A stretch of DNA of 64,000 bases from Blastocladiella emersonii ATCC 22665. Its lineage: Eukaryota > Fungi > Blastocladiomycota. Of the stretch, positions 3,567 to 9,609 are shown one piece after another; position 1 is the first letter of the stretch, and every line of letters starts with the position of its first letter. The translations under genes and the position numbers were made by a program. The notes under the pieces were generated by a model. That model worked only from the letters and a program-made list of their open reading frames with translations, was not told the DNA's origin and did not search any database. The stretch is taken from positions 558,001-622,000 of the forward strand of contig JANHCV010000003.1 of assembly GCA_025594325.1 (NCBI GenBank). Reading direction: 5' to 3'.

Positions 3567-4329
3567 CTACTCGAAGACGCGGTCGCCGCGGATCCGGCGA
3601 GCCAGGTGCAGGTCCTTGGTCATGAGCGTGACGCGCTTGGCGTGGATGGCGCACAGGTTGCTACGGTGGTGGGGGGTGAGGGCGGCGGGTCAGTGAGCAA
3701 GTCATCGCCGAGTCAGGCACAGGTGAGCGATGGCGTACGCGTCCTCCATGAGATGAACGATGTAGCTCTCGGCAGCCTCCTACACGGGGGCAGACATCGG
3801 GAGTCAGTGGTCCGGGGCCGGGTCGATGGTGCCGCAGTGAGCGAGCGAGCGAGGAGCGAACCTGGAGGGCACCAAGCGCAGACGCTTGCCAGCGGAACTG
3901 CTGGGTCGGCATCAAGTCGTCTGTGATCTCGCGGACGAGGCGCGAGAACGGGAGCCTGCGGAGGAGCAGGTCCGTCGTCTTCTGGTACTTGCGGATCTCG
4001 CGCAGTGCCACCGTGCCGGGGCGATACCGGCGCTTGTGCTTCTCGGTCGTCTCGGCGGACGCTGGAGCTAACCGAGCGGTACGGCGGAGCGCGCCAGCGA
4101 TAATGAGTCACGATGGACGGTGTGCGGATCGAGCGTCTCGACGCGATCTCAGGCAACCGCCCACTGAACCGATAGATGGATGGAAGCGCGTCGCCGACGT
4201 ACGAGTCTTCACGGGCGCCTTGCGAACCGCGGCGCCCGCCGCCGGAGCCGTCTTCGCGGCAAGCGACTTTTTGGCGGCACTCTTGCCGGTCGACGAGCCG
4301 GCGAAGTTGCTCTTCTTGGTCCGCGCCAT
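3567..4329 (-). CDS. CENH3: Centromeric histone H3 variant (CENP-A/Cse4/Cnp1 type), 4 exons
   Basis: Exons 4329-4203, 4061-3862, 3779-3739 and 3660-3567 splice to MARTKKS...[84 protein letters not shown]. CenH3 hallmarks: LPFS instead of LPFQ, RWQ instead of RFQ, loop 1 two residues longer than H3, and a divergent N-tail. Confidence 0.88.
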
Positions 4330-4624
4330 AGTGATGATGGTGGTGGAGGGCGCAAAGGAGTCGCACGTGGATGCAAGCGGCAAGAGGCGTTGCGGTCAAG
4401 CGGTGCGCGTCGAGTCGAATCGAGGACCAAGAAGACGTTGCGCCAGGTTTCGGCGGTCAAGTTACATTTAGCGCGTTAAGGCGTCTGGTCGTTCGCTTTG
4501 TTGGTTCTCGAGAGAAGAAGATAGCGAACGCGGCGGTGAGGCGAAGAGGAGCGTGGCGCGCGGCTCAGCTGATGCCACGCGAGCTGACTCGCCCGCTTTC
4601 GCTCCACCGTCTCCCGCCGCGCCG

Positions 4625-4630
4625 TATAAA
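4625..4630 (+). promoter_or_regulatory. TATA box (TATAAA) upstream of PCF11, in the divergent CENH3/PCF11 intergenic region
   Basis: TATAAA about 150 nt upstream of the ACCACCATG start at 4776, in otherwise GC-rich DNA. Confidence 0.5.
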
Positions 4631-4775
4631 GAGCGCGCGCCCGCCCGTCGCCCGCCGACGCTCCCGCAACGCTCATTAAGCAACGTAATACCACCACTGC
4701 GGCCGCCGTCTACTGGCCCCGCGTCACCAAGCCCCGCTACCACCACCGCACCGCCCGCTCCACAACACCACCACC

Positions 4776-7644
4776 ATGAACGCGGCCCAACTCGACGTCG
4801 TGCGGCAGGACTACCTCGCGTCGCTCGCCGAGCTCAAGGACACGTCGCGCCCGGCCATCATGACCCTCACGTCGCTCGCCGCCGAGACGGCCGTGGCCGC
4901 GCCCGCCGTCGTCGCCGCCATTGTCGAGCGCAGCTTCTCCGTACGGCTTCCCTCGACGCCTGCCCCCTGAGCTCGACTCCGTGGGCGGGGCTCAGCGGGG
5001 CGCACTACCGTCTGGTGAGTGTGCACTAATGATCGCCCGAACGTTCTCTTGTATACCCCTTCTCCCTGCTACTATCGGCTATGCCATGCTGCTCATGCAC
5101 CGACTCGACCGACTACTGTTCCTCAACTGCCTCATGCTCATGCTCACGGCGCTCGCCGACGCACTACTACCACTACCGCTCGCCCGCATGGCCTCGTGGC
5201 GCGGCGCGACTCGACCGACCGACCGACTGCTTTGGAATGGACCTGTCGCTGCTGCTGCACATCACCACCACACTTGCCCTACCCCCCTCCCATCGAACAA
5301 TAAAAAACCTGCTCTCGACGACACGGTCGCGCGCCTGCGCTCGCTCGCCCGCCCGCTCGGTTCGGCTCCTGCATCATCATCGTCGCCACGTCATCCTGTC
5401 AACTCTGCACCATCCGCGCGGGGCGGCTGATCGGTCCTGGCGTGTCGCTGATGCTGCTGTCCGTGATTTTGTGTCTGTCGATGATCGCGACGTGTATCTG
5501 TCCTCGAATACTCGTTGTTCATTCATCGTTCCTCTCCCCGCTCGTGGTCGCTCGCCTCTGCTGCTCTCCTCGTCTACCAACGACTCGACTCGCTCGCCCG
5601 GCTTCTCGACCCTCAGGCCGCGCCGCCCACCAAGCTGCCCGTCATGTACCTGATTGACTCGATTCTGAAGAATGTCGGCGGCCCGTACCCCGACCTGTTT
5701 GCCAAGGTGATTCTCGGGGTGTACCAGGACGCCTTCCTCGCGTCCGACGACCGCGCCCGTCAGGCCTTCTTGAAAGTGCTGCACACCTGGCGGAACCCGC
5801 CGCCTCCGCCTCCACCGACCTCGGCCGCCGCCGCTCCCGCCCGCCCGCGCGGCCCACTCTTCCCGCCCGCCGTCCTCGACCAGATCGACGCCTTCGTGCG
5901 CTCGGTCCCACGGGTACGTCGTGCTCCCGCCGTCGACCGTCGCGTCGGCCAACCCGAGGACTCACGCAAAAAACTGCAGCCCGTGGCACCGACCACCGCG
6001 ACCACGGCCACGGCCATGACCTCTGCGTCGTCCGCGGCCGCGGCCATGGCCGCCGCTGCTGCCGCCTCGGCTGCCTCCGCCGTGAACCCCGCCGACCCGG
6101 GCCTCGTCGACCTCAACACGCTCATCGAGGCGCGCACCGTGCAGGCGCACCAGAACCCGCTCGACGTCGACAACATCCAGAAGCTCGACGCCCTCATGCA
6201 GGTACGCTTCCCCCGCCCTTCACCCCGCCCAACTTGCGCTCACCTCCCCACCCGCACCATGTAGCTCCGCTCCCTGATCCTCGCCGGCCACGTCCCGCCG
6301 CAGCAAATGGACGCGGTACGGCAGTCGATTGCGGTGCTCGCGCACGAGTTCTTTGCCGCGCTCGCGCAGCAGCAGCAGCAGCAGCAGCTCCTCGGCGCGC
6401 TCGCCGCGGGGCTCCCGCTGCCCGCCGCCGCCGCCGCAGGCCTCGGCGGCTACGCTATGCCCGCGGTCCCGCTCGTCGTTCCGCCACTCGTCGTCCCGCT
6501 CCCCGGCACGGCGGGCGTGGGCGCAGTCGCGCCGCGCGCAGCGTCACCGCCCGTGGTGCCCGCGGTGCCGCGGATCGAGATCAGTTTGACGCGGTACGGT
6601 CTCATCTCGTCGTCGAGGGTAGCTCACTCGGACTAACGCCCTGGCTGCGATGTCTGTAGCCTCGAGCCCGACGCGGTCAAGTACGTGTACCCGGCCGACT
6701 CGAAGAAGTGCACGCAGTGCGGGCTGCGGTTCCTGCGCAACGGGCCGCGCCGCATGGACGACCACATGGACTGGCACTTCCGCATGAACCGCAAGGCCCG
6801 CGACAACACGCTGTCGATCCGGTCGCGCCTGTGGCTCCCGGCGTCGCGCGAGGCACGGTTCTCGTGGCGTTACCGTCGTGTAGCGCGCGTTGCTGACTCT
6901 GTCCTGCCGCGTCGTGTGTGTAGAACTGGCTCAACAACGAGCGCCAGGAAGCCTCGGCCGGCCCGTCCTTCTTCGACCAGGTCAACGACGCCGCCGCTGC
7001 TGCCTCCGCCGCCTCCGCCGCGTCGACCGACGGCCCCACCAGCTCGGCGCTCGGCAACACCAGCAGCTCGTCGACGTCGACGACGGCCGGCGCGGCCGCG
7101 GGACTTGACCACCTGCACCTGCACCTGCACCTTCACCACCTCGACCGCGGGTCCGCGTCCGACAGCGACGACGGCACGAGCCTCGGCGGCGACGACGCCT
7201 CGGGCGCGCGGATCCTCGCGCCCGCATCGGCCGCGGCGCGCCACGCGCTCGCGTGCGCCGTGTGCCTCGAGAAGATCGACTCCGGGTACGACGCGGACGC
7301 CGACGAGTGGATCGTCAAGGACGCGGTCGCGGAGCCGGTCGCGGCGGGGTCGCACGAGGCGAGTGATGGCAGCGGGGGCAGCTGTGTGTACTACCACCGC
7401 CGGTGCTGGCGGTCGCGCGCCAAGCGGGTACGTTTTCGGCTTGTGGGTGGCGAGTGGTTGGACGTGAGAGCTAACAACGTGTTGGATAGTCGCGCAAGCG
7501 GACAGCGAGTCCCATCGACGACGCGAGCGAGATGGCGAGCGACCTTGGGTCGAGCCTGGTACGCTTCGCTCTTCGCTTGGTCCCCAAGTCTCCATCACTG
7601 ACCCATCGCCTCGAACGTAGTCGGCCAAGCGGCAGCGCGTCTGA
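4776..7644 (+). CDS. PCF11: Cleavage/polyadenylation and termination factor Pcf11 (CID plus two zinc fingers), 8 exons
   Basis: Exon 1 (4776-4940) joined to exon 2 (from 5617) gives the CID ...VERSFS|AAPPTKLPVMYLIDSILKNVGGPY. Zinc finger 1 is CTQCGLRF...HMDWHF, followed by SRLWLPASRE|NW across a GC-AG intron (6853-6923). Zinc finger 2 is CAVCLEKIDSGYDADADEWIVKDAV...YHRRC. Last exon 7621-7644 (SAKRQRV*). Confidence 0.93.
5299..5304 (+). terminator. Candidate intronic polyadenylation signal AATAAA inside PCF11 intron 1
   Basis: AATAAA followed by AAA, inside the 676-nt intron 4941-5616. A TGTA lies upstream (5050-5053) and a GT/T-rich tract downstream (about 5463-5530). Confidence 0.45.
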
Positions 7645-7705: not shown

Positions 7706-8264
7706 TCACTTGCGCGACAGCATCCCAATCACGAGCCCCGCGGCGGCAATCGCGCCGCCGACAATCGCCATCCCCACGAGCCCGTCCTTCTGGACCTGCG
7801 CGTCGATCGCGTCCAGCAGACCGCGCGCCTGCGGGTCCTCGGGGTGGTCGCGCAGCACCTGCTGGGCGTAGTTGCGCGCGTCCGCGAACCGCGCCAGCTT
7901 GAAGTACCCCTGCGCCACGTAGTACCGCGACTCACGACGCAGGGACGGGTTGTGCGGGATGATCTCTACAGACGCGGATGGCGGGGTTAGGGCGGGGAAG
8001 GGAGGGGGAGGGCAAGGGGAGGAGCGTACGCTGGAACAGGGCGATGCCGAGCTCAATCTCGTGGTACACGTTCGAGTGCACCAGGCCCCACGCGTAGTTA
8101 AAGGTCGTCGAGGCTACACAGATGCCATGTCAGCGAAGTCGCAGATATCCAGCGGCGTCGCGTGCCGTACTCGACGGGTTGGGCTGCTCGGCCTCGTACT
8201 GCTTGCGCAGCGTCGCGAGCTCCTTCTTGTCGATGGTGATTTCGCCCTCGAGCGGCGTCGTCAT
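7706..8264 (-). CDS. FIS1: Mitochondrial/peroxisomal fission protein Fis1 (TPR plus C-terminal tail anchor), 3 exons
   Basis: Spliced: LATLRKQYEAEQPNPSTSTTFNYAWGLVHS...RRESRYYVAQGYFKLARFADARNYAQQVLRDHPEDPQARGL...KDGLVGMAIVGGAIAAAGLVIGMLSRK*. Confidence 0.92.
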
Positions 8265-8585: not shown

Positions 8586-9609
8586 TTAGGCGAGCATGGC
8601 CACGGCCGCGACGACCACGGCGGCGGCAGCGGTCGTCCATGCGCCGTTCGCGAGCTGGGCGGGCGCGGCCGAGGGCGGGGCGAGCGGGAGCTGGACCTTG
8701 AGGTCGTTGGGCGTGTAGACGTAGAAGATGCCCGAGACGAGCGGCATGAGGCGGCCCTCCGTGGCGGTGGGGTCGACGGCCTCCGTGTCCATGAGGCGCA
8801 GCACGTAGTCGCGGCGGTCCTCGAAGTTGTTGGACGGGATGGTCCAGTTGAAGTTGGTCGCGGACCCGGGCAGCGTGGTGATGTTGGTGTAGGTCGTACT
8901 CGACTTGGTGCCCCACTGCAGCACCATGTTCTTGGGCTTGATGGACACGCCGTCCAGCGACCACGTCGCGTTCAATGGGTACCTTTCGCTGCCGCGCGCG
9001 ACGACCGGGATCTCTACAGGCGGGGTGCGGGCGTGAGTTGATGGTGCGCGCCGCGAGGGCGTGCGGAGCGAGCAAAAACGTACGCCACCACGGGTACTGG
9101 ACCTGCTGCGGGGGCCAGATGAACTTGGGGCCTACATCGCGGACGACAGTTAGTCCAGTTGCGCGCGGCGTAGGAAGCGAGCGAGGCGGCAGCGTACGGG
9201 CAGACGTGGACACGGAGCCGTCAATGTTGCCGTCGGCGGGAATGTCGTTCGGGTTGGTCTGGCCGCCCGGGACGATGAGGCCGTCGTTGTTGTTGGTGTT
9301 CCCGTTGCCGTTGCCGTTGCCGTTCCCGTTGTTGTTGTTCGTGTTGCCGTTCCCGTTCCCGTTCCCATTGTTGGTGTTGCCGTTGTTCGCGTTGCCGGCG
9401 TTGCCGTTGTTGGCGTTTCCGTTACCAGCGTTCCCGTTGCCGGTGTTACCGGTGTTCCCCGTGTTACCGGTGTTGCCGGTGTTACCCGTGTTGCCCGTGT
9501 TCCCGCCGGTCCCACCGTTGCCGCCGTTGTTGGCCTGGGCGTCGGCCGTGCCGAGGAGGCCGAGGAGCACGGCGAGGAGGAGGGCGAGCTGCACAACCGT
9601 CACGCGCAT
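8586..9609 (-). CDS. Secreted, probably GPI-anchored surface protein with a Gly/Asn-rich repeat and a small beta-rich domain, 3 exons
   Basis: Signal peptide MRVTVVQLALLLAVLLGLLGTADA, then (GNT)n and (GN)n repeats. Two GTACG introns. Aromatic beta-strand domain (FNWTIPS...YVLRL...SGIFYVY) and a hydrophobic C-terminal tail ending at the stop. Confidence 0.75.

What the first reader, a model, noticed from the sequence alone, without database searches (positions are those of the whole stretch)
5020..5614. An AG-free zone of about 595 nt in PCF11 intron 1, with a possible distant branch point
Seen: reading base by base, there is no AG dinucleotide on the sense strand from 5020 to the acceptor AG at 5615-5616, although A and G are both common there. 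A branch-like CACTAAT sits at 5024-5030, at the very start of the zone, and no clear CTGAC/CTAAC lies in the last 50 nt. CTGAT occurs at about 5427 and 5448. Established: long AG-exclusion zones mark distant branch points and are associated with regulated splicing. Inference: slow or scanning-dependent 3' splice-site selection would widen the window for the intronic poly(A) site to compete, so AG depletion could be part of the switch.
Basis: partly seen in the sequence, partly recalled or inferred. Interest (0 to 1): 0.7.

Follow-up and report, generated by a model that had tools for sequence, protein, structure and literature searches.

The report
AG-free first intron of fungal PCF11
The unusually long first intron of the PCF11 gene in the water fungus Blastocladiella emersonii has no AG dinucleotide for 595 bases before its splice acceptor, most likely because its branch site lies far upstream, but no RNA data were available to confirm this.

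Summary
The + strand has no AG from 5020 to 5614, against about 19 expected from composition. The next longest AG-free run in 264 kb of this genome, both strands, is 294 nt.

The window is from Blastocladiella emersonii. The zone fills the last 595 nt of PCF11 intron 1 (4941-5616, 676 nt), whose junction is fixed by intronless Allomyces orthologues. Typical introns here are about 65 nt, with a CT[ACG]AC branch site 8-36 nt from the acceptor.

Four other long introns of this genome (246-697 nt) carry 4-12 AGs each and a consensus branch site 27-86 nt from the acceptor. PCF11 intron 1 has no consensus branch motif within 165 nt of its acceptor, is not repetitive, and folds no better than shuffled sequence.

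The orthologous intron of Catenaria anguillulae has the same layout on a smaller scale: 236 nt AG-free, with its only consensus branch motif 214 nt upstream.

Best reading (about 0.55): a metazoan-type, unstructured AG-exclusion zone imposed by use of a distant branch site.

The proposed link to an intronic poly(A) switch is untested and weakly supported. There is one AATAAA in this intron, the hexamer is not enriched in this genome, and Catenaria has none.

No RNA runs were listed.

The parts
4776..4940 (+). PCF11 exon 1 (55 codons, start of the CID domain)
   Evidence: Database protein P0001 (B. emersonii 'mRNA 3' end processing factor', 609 aa) maps residues 1-55 here.
4941..5616 (+). Intron 1, 676 nt, phase 0, GTACGG...CAG
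   Evidence: P0001 residues 55/56 flank it. The junction is colinear with intronless Allomyces orthologues. Chytrids and Sphaeroforma have an intron at the same position.
4941..5019 (+). 5' segment of the intron, holding its only internal AGs (4970, 4994, 5018)
5015..5020 (+). Internal consensus 5' splice-site-like GTGAGT. Its AG is the upstream boundary of the zone. Use as a donor would leave an in-frame TGA (4968) in the mRNA.
   Evidence: function inferred only
5020..5614 (+). AG-free zone (595 nt; 63% pyrimidine; normal sequence complexity; unstructured)
5025..5030 (+). Branch-site candidate ACTAAT. Branch A is at 5029, which is 89 nt from the 5' splice site and 587 nt from the acceptor. 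It sits at the 5' edge of the zone.
   Evidence: 'actaat' is a published B. emersonii branch variant.
5046..5075 (+). Most pyrimidine-rich tract of the intron (80% Y), just 3' of ACTAAT
5142..5147 (+). Branch-site candidate GCTCAC, the best match to the species' consensus, 470 nt from the acceptor. GCTCAT, CCTCAT and GCTCAT lie at 5091, 5130 and 5136.
5299..5304 (+). AATAAA, the only copy on either strand of the 64-kb window. A poly(A) signal role is unproven.
5426..5452 (+). Two GCTGAT branch-site candidates (5426-5431 and 5447-5452), 186 and 165 nt from the acceptor. These are the nearest consensus-like motifs.
5511..5570 (+). Second pyrimidine-rich tract (73-80% Y), 45-105 nt upstream of the acceptor
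5576..5581 (+). Degenerate branch-like ACCAAC, 36 nt from the acceptor. It is the only conventional-distance candidate and is a weak one.
   Evidence: Read. It is one mismatch from the published minor variants atcaac and ctcaac.
5615..5616 (+). Acceptor AG, the first AG after 5019
5617..5913 (+). PCF11 exon 2 (99 codons, core of the CID domain)
   Evidence: Pfam CID, E = 1.7e-6. P0001 residues 56-154 map here.

Best explanation
The zone is an AG-exclusion zone. PCF11 intron 1 is spliced from one or more branch sites far upstream of the acceptor, at least 165 nt and possibly 470-587 nt. The second splicing step takes the first AG downstream of the branch, so any AG in between would create a premature, frame-breaking acceptor and is removed by selection.

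The likeliest geometry is an ordinary short-intron front end: the 5' splice site, then 51-89 nt to a branch motif followed by a pyrimidine tract. After that comes a long, unstructured, AG-free spacer.

Shown: the AG absence and its statistical excess, the lack of a proximal consensus branch site, the unstructured nature of the zone, and the parallel in Catenaria.

Inferred: which branch is used, that selection maintains the zone, and any regulatory consequence.
For: (1) The zone has 0 AG against 19.1 expected. Using P(G|A) = 0.125 from four other long introns of this genome gives P about 1e-5. Using their AG density of 0.0185 per nt gives P about 1.6e-5.

(2) The other long B. emersonii introns (RPS10 630 nt, RPL20 697, RPS21 334, RPS30 314 or 246) each carry 4-12 AGs and have AG-free tails of only 29-112 nt. 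Their consensus branch sites lie 27-86 nt from the acceptor. The other PCF11 introns have branch sites at 15-24 nt. In 35 short introns found de novo the distance is 8-34 nt. In all eight introns whose acceptor I fixed by protein homology, the acceptor is the first AG after the branch motif.

(3) PCF11 intron 1 has no CT[ACG]A[CT] within 165 nt of the acceptor.

(4) ACTAAT lies 10 nt after the last AG and is followed by the most pyrimidine-rich tract of the intron.

(5) In the Catenaria orthologue the AGs are only at +24 and +26, then 236 nt are AG-free (6.8 expected). Its single consensus motif TCTGAC sits 51 nt from the 5' splice site and 214 nt from the acceptor, followed by a run of nine T. 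The two introns share no alignable sequence, so only the layout is shared.

(6) The zone is neither a repeat nor of low complexity, and the intron occurs only once in the genome. It is not structured: z = +2.15. This matches what is described for human AG-exclusion zones, in contrast to the structured distant-branch introns of yeast.

(7) Upstream branch-like motifs followed by AGs at +42 and +65 are tolerated in the RPL20 and RPS10 introns. Generic avoidance of decoy sites therefore does not explain a total absence.
Against: No lariat or RNA-seq evidence exists: no RNA runs were listed.

A degenerate proximal branch (ACCAAC, 36 nt upstream) cannot be excluded. About 10% of published B. emersonii introns use non-consensus branch sites.

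The lack of a consensus motif in the last 165 nt is not improbable by composition alone. By my own estimate about 1 is expected.

A branch-to-acceptor distance of 470-587 nt would exceed the maxima I found in the literature: about 400 nt in human and 471 nt in Candida glabrata.

Only 264 kb of the 32.65 Mb genome could be sampled. Extrapolating the empirical tail of AG-free runs does not exclude one run of this size somewhere in the genome by chance.

The Catenaria case alone is only moderately significant (P about 0.001-0.03).
Confidence: 0.55

Rival explanations
1. The branch site is proximal and degenerate (for example ACCAAC, 36 nt upstream). The AG-free, pyrimidine-rich stretch is kept for another reason: a binding platform for a CU-rich RNA-binding protein, or an element that times splicing against premature 3'-end formation.
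For: Degenerate branch sites exist in this species. A pyrimidine-rich tract lies 45-105 nt upstream of the acceptor. The intron sits at the ancient first-intron position of PCF11, which is the longest intron of the gene in several lineages. In vertebrates that intron carries an autoregulatory poly(A) site. One AATAAA lies at 5299.
Against: With a proximal branch, upstream AGs are harmless, so strict exclusion of AG alone (GA is enriched) has no obvious cause. No motif or sequence is shared with the Catenaria intron. AATAAA is not enriched in this genome and is absent from the Catenaria intron.
Confidence: 0.17
2. A by-product of composition or growth. The intron expanded by slippage of short AG-free motifs (CGAC, CTCATG, CGCT, GCT, CAT) in a pyrimidine-skewed strand, and the AG absence is not itself selected.
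For: Small tandem arrays are present. 6-mer diversity is slightly below a Markov simulation (0.776 against 0.824 ± 0.023). A coding Gly/Asn repeat in the same window is AG-free for 274 nt on its strand with 28 AG expected, so repeats can produce this.
Against: The tandem arrays cover under 15% of the zone. Overall complexity is within the normal range for this window (mean 0.80, 5th percentile 0.70), unlike the Gly/Asn repeat (0.46). Many AA, GG, AC, AT, CG and TG steps are one mutation away from AG. An independent, unalignable orthologous intron shows the same feature.
Confidence: 0.13
3. Pure chance: the extreme tail of AG-free run lengths in a 32.65 Mb genome.
For: Only 0.8% of the genome was sampled. 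The empirical tail (271 runs of 100 nt or more, 61 of 150 or more, 14 of 200 or more, 5 of 250 or more in 528 kb of strand) extrapolates to roughly 0.1-1 run of this length genome-wide. That extrapolation is my own estimate.
Against: The long runs in the sample are A-poor coding stretches with only 4-11 AG expected, or a codon repeat. This zone is non-coding, has 19 AG expected, ends exactly at a homology-verified acceptor, and has a parallel in Catenaria.
Confidence: 0.05

Closest known systems
Human AG-exclusion zones with distant branch points (Gooding et al. 2006, PMC1431707; e.g. PTB exon 11, AGEZ 381 nt, branch at -351; nPTB AGEZ 438 nt)
   Same: A long AG-free stretch lies directly upstream of the acceptor, and there is no good branch site at the usual distance. 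A consensus branch motif with an adjacent pyrimidine tract sits near the 5' edge of the zone. The zone is unstructured and its layout is conserved in an orthologue. It occurs in a gene whose product regulates RNA processing.
   Different: This is a fungus whose introns are normally about 65 nt. The zone is longer (595 nt) than the examples cited in that paper. The intron separates constitutive coding exons, and no alternative exon is known. The branch is unmapped.
Distant-branch-point introns of Saccharomycotina (Gahura et al. 2011, PMC3239191; COF1, UBC13; distances up to 166 nt in Saccharomyces and 471 nt in C. glabrata)
   Same: A fungal intron in which the branch site may lie far from the acceptor.
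   Different: The yeast cases depend on a stable stem between branch and acceptor, which shortens the distance and masks internal AGs. Here there are no internal AGs at all and the RNA folds worse than shuffled sequence (z = +2.15).
Vertebrate PCF11 intron-1 PAS1 autoregulation (Kamieniarz-Gdula et al. 2019, PMC6458999)
   Same: The same gene, and a long first intron. The intron position is shared by chytrids, an ichthyosporean and, within one codon, a beetle. One AATAAA lies inside the intron.
   Different: The vertebrate element is a conserved tandem AATAAA with proven use and proven PCF11 dependence. Here there is a single hexamer that is not a general signal in this genome, it is not conserved in Catenaria, and there is no evidence of use. 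No vertebrate sequence was compared here; this rests on the literature only.
Other long introns of B. emersonii (RPS10, RPL20, RPS21, RPS30)
   Same: The same genome, similar length (246-697 nt) and similar base composition.
   Different: In those introns the extra length lies between the 5' splice site and the branch (261-611 nt). They carry 4-12 AGs and keep a consensus branch site 27-86 nt from the acceptor.

Membership tests
AG-exclusion-zone / distant-branch-point intron (sensu Gooding et al. 2006) | [quoted passage not shown] | tested here: met
   595 nt, 5020-5614
AG-exclusion-zone / distant-branch-point intron (sensu Gooding et al. 2006) | Excess over what composition and comparable introns give | tested here: met
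   0 AG against 19.1 expected. P is about 1e-5 using AG rates of four other long introns. The next longest run in 264 kb is 294 nt.
AG-exclusion-zone / distant-branch-point intron (sensu Gooding et al. 2006) | No credible branch site at the conventional distance | tested here: inconclusive
   No CT[ACG]A[CT] lies within 165 nt and no NNT[ACG]A[CT] within 80 nt. A degenerate ACCAAC at -36 cannot be excluded.
AG-exclusion-zone / distant-branch-point intron (sensu Gooding et al. 2006) | Consensus branch motif with adjacent pyrimidine tract near the 5' end of the zone | tested here: met
   ACTAAT 5025-5030 is followed by an 80%-pyrimidine tract at 5046-5075. GCTCAC lies at 5142.
AG-exclusion-zone / distant-branch-point intron (sensu Gooding et al. 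2006) | Same layout in an orthologous intron | tested here: met
   Catenaria anguillulae: 236 nt AG-free, and the only consensus motif TCTGAC lies 214 nt from the acceptor. This is not seen in the metagenome blastoclad contig L024, the two chytrids or Sphaeroforma, which have proximal branch motifs and/or ordinary AG content.
AG-exclusion-zone / distant-branch-point intron (sensu Gooding et al. 2006) | Lariat branch mapped to the distal site; an inserted AG becomes the acceptor | not testable with these tools
   No RNA runs were listed. Bench work is needed.
PCF11 intron-1 intronic-polyadenylation autoregulation (vertebrate PAS1 type) | Intron at the homologous first-intron position of PCF11 | tested here: met
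   The same phase-0 position occurs in Fimicolochytrium, Thoreauomyces and Sphaeroforma, and within one codon in Nicrophorus. Vertebrate sequence was not examined.
PCF11 intron-1 intronic-polyadenylation autoregulation (vertebrate PAS1 type) | Conserved poly(A) signal(s) inside the intron | tested here: not met
   There is a single AATAAA (5299) and none in the Catenaria intron. The hexamer is not enriched genome-wide: 20 observed, 15.7 expected.
PCF11 intron-1 intronic-polyadenylation autoregulation (vertebrate PAS1 type) | Transcripts ending in the intron, responsive to PCF11 level | not testable with these tools
   No RNA runs were listed.

The most novel reading that the evidence does not exclude
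PCF11 self-regulation through its first intron predates the split of fungi and animals. In the Blastocladiella/Catenaria lineage the switch would be built from a distant branch point plus an AG-free spacer of about 590 nt. The spacer would delay exon ligation, so that premature 3'-end formation (around the AATAAA at 5299) or use of the internal GTGAGT donor (5015) can compete with productive splicing.
Probability: 0.12. Interest if true: 0.85.

Novelty: new member of a known kind. Interest (0 to 1): 0.55.

Why it matters
If the branch point really lies 165-587 nt from the acceptor, this would be among the longest branch-to-acceptor distances known. It would also be an unstructured, metazoan-style AG-exclusion zone in an early-diverging fungus whose introns are normally about 65 nt. 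That would show that first-AG selection over long unstructured distances is not an animal peculiarity, and that it is a second way, besides long-range folding, for a short-intron spliceosome to tolerate a long intron.

The intron sits at the ancient first-intron position of PCF11, the site of a proven autoregulatory poly(A) switch in vertebrates. It therefore gives a concrete, mutable test system for whether that regulation is older than animals.

Tried and rejected
RNA evidence: the look-up of sequencing runs listed no RNA run.

Other long introns were therefore fetched through the genome search on ribosomal-protein Pfam families. The Stm1 family search found nothing.

Structured RNA or known RNA family: Rfam gave only sub-threshold chance hits. 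The intron folds worse than shuffles (z = +2.15). The RPS10 intron, folded as a comparison, gave z = -0.86, so the folding contrast between the two is modest.

Repeat or transposon: the intron matches only itself in the genome. TRF found only four arrays of 16-22 nt inside the zone.

Sequence conservation between the B. emersonii and Catenaria introns: the local alignment score equals the shuffle mean.

Coding potential in the zone: the GC-periodicity spread is 0.08, and no frame is continuous with exon 2 beyond about 100 nt.

AATAAA as a general poly(A) signal in this genome: rejected, 20 observed against 15.7 expected.

Decoy avoidance as a general rule: rejected, because upstream consensus branch motifs followed by AGs are tolerated in the RPL20 and RPS10 introns.

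P0124 (beetle isoform) was not on record, so P0155 was used instead. A findings search by words gave nothing. A paper search for B. emersonii RNA-seq gave nothing useful.

Exon 2 was searched by reference, and the full-length protein used afterwards is the database's own record P0001. No human or vertebrate sequence was fetched or compared.
Full report
OBSERVATION. Reading 4400-6200 and scanning the window confirm that the + strand has no AG between 5020 and 5614.

- The last AG upstream (5018-5019) lies inside a consensus donor-like GTGAGT (5015-5020). The next AG is the acceptor at 5615-5616.
- The zone holds 86 A and 132 G, so 19.1 AG are expected. In 20,000 shuffles the mean was 19.0 and the minimum 6.
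- No other dinucleotide is close to absent. GA is enriched (26 against 19.1), so this is specific to AG.
- In the window the next longest AG-free run is 204 nt. With 200 kb more of the same genome, both strands, it is 294 nt.
- In 600-nt tiles the lowest observed/expected ratio elsewhere is 0.19.
- The other long runs are A-poor coding stretches with 4-11 AG expected, or a Gly/Asn codon repeat.

WHAT THE LOCUS IS. Exon 2 (5617-5913) hits Pfam CID.

- A search of 1.84 billion representatives with exon 2, given by reference, returned a 609-aa protein identical over residues 56-154. Its source names it mRNA 3' end processing factor of Blastocladiella emersonii ATCC 22665.
- That protein maps exon 1 to 4776-4940 and exon 2 to 5617-5913, so intron 1 is 4941-5616: 676 nt, GTACGG...CAG, phase 0.
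- The junction is independently fixed by the Allomyces javanicus and A. arbusculus orthologues, which encode the same stretch without an intron.
- I did not build or search a joined exon model.
- The window is contig 15 of a 32.65 Mb assembly, and the intron sequence is single-copy.

WHAT IS NORMAL IN THIS GENOME.

- A published EST study of 105 B. emersonii introns found lengths of 55-333 nt, most of them 60-79 nt. Donors were mostly GTACG or GTGCG, and branch sites mostly [AG]CT[GCA]AC.
- My 35 de novo short introns agree: median 65 nt, branch A 37-65 nt from the 5' end in all but two, and 8-34 nt from the 3' end. Their AG observed/expected ratio upstream of the branch is 0.65.
- The four other PCF11 introns analysed (62-66 nt) have consensus branch sites 15-24 nt from the acceptor.
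- Earlier notes of this scan pointed to long introns in ribosomal-protein genes, and I fetched four: RPS10 630 nt, RPL20 697, RPS21 334, RPS30 314 or 246.
- These four carry 4-12 AGs each (pooled 36 against 77.7 expected, ratio 0.46) and have AG-free tails of 29-112 nt. Their consensus branch sites lie 27-86 nt from the acceptor, so the extra length lies between the 5' splice site and the branch.
- With their P(G|A) of 0.125, the chance that 86 A's all avoid a following G is about 1e-5. With their AG density it is 1.6e-5.
- The refuting condition 'AG-free runs of this length are common in this genome's long introns' is therefore not met, within the limits of the sample.

ANATOMY OF THE INTRON.

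- The three internal AGs all lie in the first 79 nt.
- Consensus-like branch motifs are ACTAAT (5025; 587 nt from the acceptor), GCTCAT (5091), CCTCAT (5130), GCTCAT (5136), GCTCAC (5142; 470 nt) and GCTGAT (5426 and 5447; 186 and 165 nt). There is none nearer, not even a relaxed NNT[ACG]A[CT] in the last 80 nt.
- The only conventional-distance candidate is a degenerate ACCAAC at -36.
- The two most pyrimidine-rich tracts are 5046-5075, just 3' of ACTAAT, and 5511-5570.
- The zone has normal sequence complexity: 6-mer diversity is 0.776 against a window mean of 0.80, while the Gly/Asn repeat scores 0.46.
- It contains only four short tandem arrays and matches no Rfam family. The intron folds worse than dinucleotide shuffles (z = +2.15).

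ORTHOLOGUES. The intron position is old.

- It is shared, in phase 0 and at the same residue, by the chytrids Fimicolochytrium (123 nt) and Thoreauomyces (90 nt) and by the ichthyosporean Sphaeroforma (953 nt). A beetle has it within one codon, and a metagenomic blastoclad contig has it at 139 nt. Allomyces has lost it.
- The two chytrids have a consensus branch motif 15-25 nt from the acceptor, the blastoclad contig has an ACTAAG-type motif about 30 nt upstream, and these three short introns contain internal AGs. Sphaeroforma has 58 AG against 60 expected.
- The exception is Catenaria anguillulae, the closest relative found. Its 265-nt intron has AGs only at +24 and +26, then 236 AG-free nt (6.8 expected). 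This is the longest AG-free run in that 7.8-kb locus.
- Its only consensus branch motif, TCTGAC, lies 51 nt from the donor and 214 nt from the acceptor, and is followed by a run of nine T.
- The two introns are not alignable, so the shared property is the layout, not the sequence.
- Long Allomyces introns at the next intron position (420 and 469 nt) have 13-15 AGs and ACTAAC 34-40 nt from the acceptor. Long blastoclad introns are therefore not AG-free as a rule.

MECHANISM.

- In all eight introns whose acceptor I could fix by homology, the acceptor is the first AG after the consensus branch motif.
- Under that rule, AGs upstream of the branch are harmless and AGs downstream are harmful. A stretch with no AG at all is therefore what selection would produce if the branch, or several usable branches, lay far upstream.
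- The front end of the intron looks like an ordinary short intron. The donor-to-branch distance is 89 nt in B. emersonii if ACTAAT is used, and 51 nt in Catenaria, against 37-65 nt for all but two of the short introns. The extra length would then lie after the branch.
- This is the opposite of the ribosomal-protein introns, where the extra length lies before the branch.
- The literature describes two ways of coping with distant branch points. Human AG-exclusion zones are unstructured, with examples of 381 and 438 nt and branch points up to about 400 nt away. Yeast introns use a stem that shortens the distance and hides internal AGs, with distances up to 166, 185 and 471 nt in three species.
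- This intron is of the first type.
- Which branch is used, and whether the arrangement slows the second step, are inferences.

THE POLY(A) IDEA.

- In vertebrates the first PCF11 intron holds conserved tandem AATAAA signals that autoregulate the gene.
- Here one AATAAA lies at 5299. It is the only copy on either strand of the 64-kb window.
- The hexamer is not enriched in the genome sample (20 observed, 15.7 expected), so it is not evidently the usual signal in this organism. Catenaria's intron has none.
- That PCF11's first intron is the longest of the gene in B. emersonii, Catenaria, Sphaeroforma and the beetle is suggestive but not a test.
- No vertebrate sequence was examined.

LIMITS.

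- No RNA runs were listed, so splice-site use, the branch point and 3' ends are untested.
- Only 0.8% of the genome could be sampled.
- A degenerate proximal branch cannot be excluded.

VERDICT.

- The AG-exclusion / distant-branch reading is the best supported (about 0.55).
- The link to intronic polyadenylation is unsupported speculation (about 0.12 as part of the wider novel case).

Noticed in passing
window 3661-4383 (- strand): An intron-containing histone H3 variant is transcribed divergently from PCF11. It has a long divergent N-terminal tail ([13 protein letters not shown]...) and an H3-fold core ([15 protein letters not shown]...), which looks like CENP-A/Cse4. The two genes share a promoter region of about 390 nt.
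   Followed up: no
window 7706-8056 (- strand); L023 6598-7111; L026 5217-5750; L024 6819-7025: A Fis1 gene lies tail-to-tail just downstream of PCF11 in B. emersonii, both Allomyces species and the metagenomic blastoclad contig. The synteny is conserved across the phylum.
   Followed up: partly
window 9261-9534 (- strand): The Gly/Asn repeat coding region is AG-free for 274 nt on its sense strand, although 28 AG are expected. This comes from GGC/AAC codon repetition and shows that repeats can mimic AG exclusion.
   Followed up: partly
L032 588-1284 (RPL20 first intron, G000 contig 2): This 697-nt intron has its last consensus GCTGAC 86 nt from the acceptor, at the start of a 96-nt AG-free, pyrimidine-rich tail. 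It is a moderately distant branch-point candidate in a second gene.
   Followed up: partly
L026 2023-2442 and L023 3523-3991: The first PCF11 intron of the two Allomyces species, at the position of B. emersonii intron 2, is long (420 and 469 nt) and 85% identical between them. It has a near-perfect block around AAAAAAATACACTTGTTGGACTCGCTCGTCGC. With only two close species, the meaning of this block is open.
   Followed up: partly
L022 3716-3747 and 4623-5999: The public Catenaria PCF11 model looks broken. A 32-nt 'intron' reads through as conserved coding sequence in another frame (GPVFPAQVLDQLDAFVRSVPRP), and the C-terminal Pcf11_C part is called as a separate 283-aa gene.
   Followed up: no
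L024 3826-3885: In the metagenomic blastoclad, PCF11 intron 1 has an upstream ACTCAC 29 nt from the donor, followed by an AG 27 nt later. This is a potential alternative 60-nt intron that would shift the frame into a stop.
   Followed up: no
264-kb genome sample (window plus L002-L021): GTACG is by far the commonest donor (26 of 35 de novo introns), well ahead of GTGAG or GTAAG. This raises the question of whether the U1 snRNA 5' end of this fungus is adapted to it.
   Followed up: no
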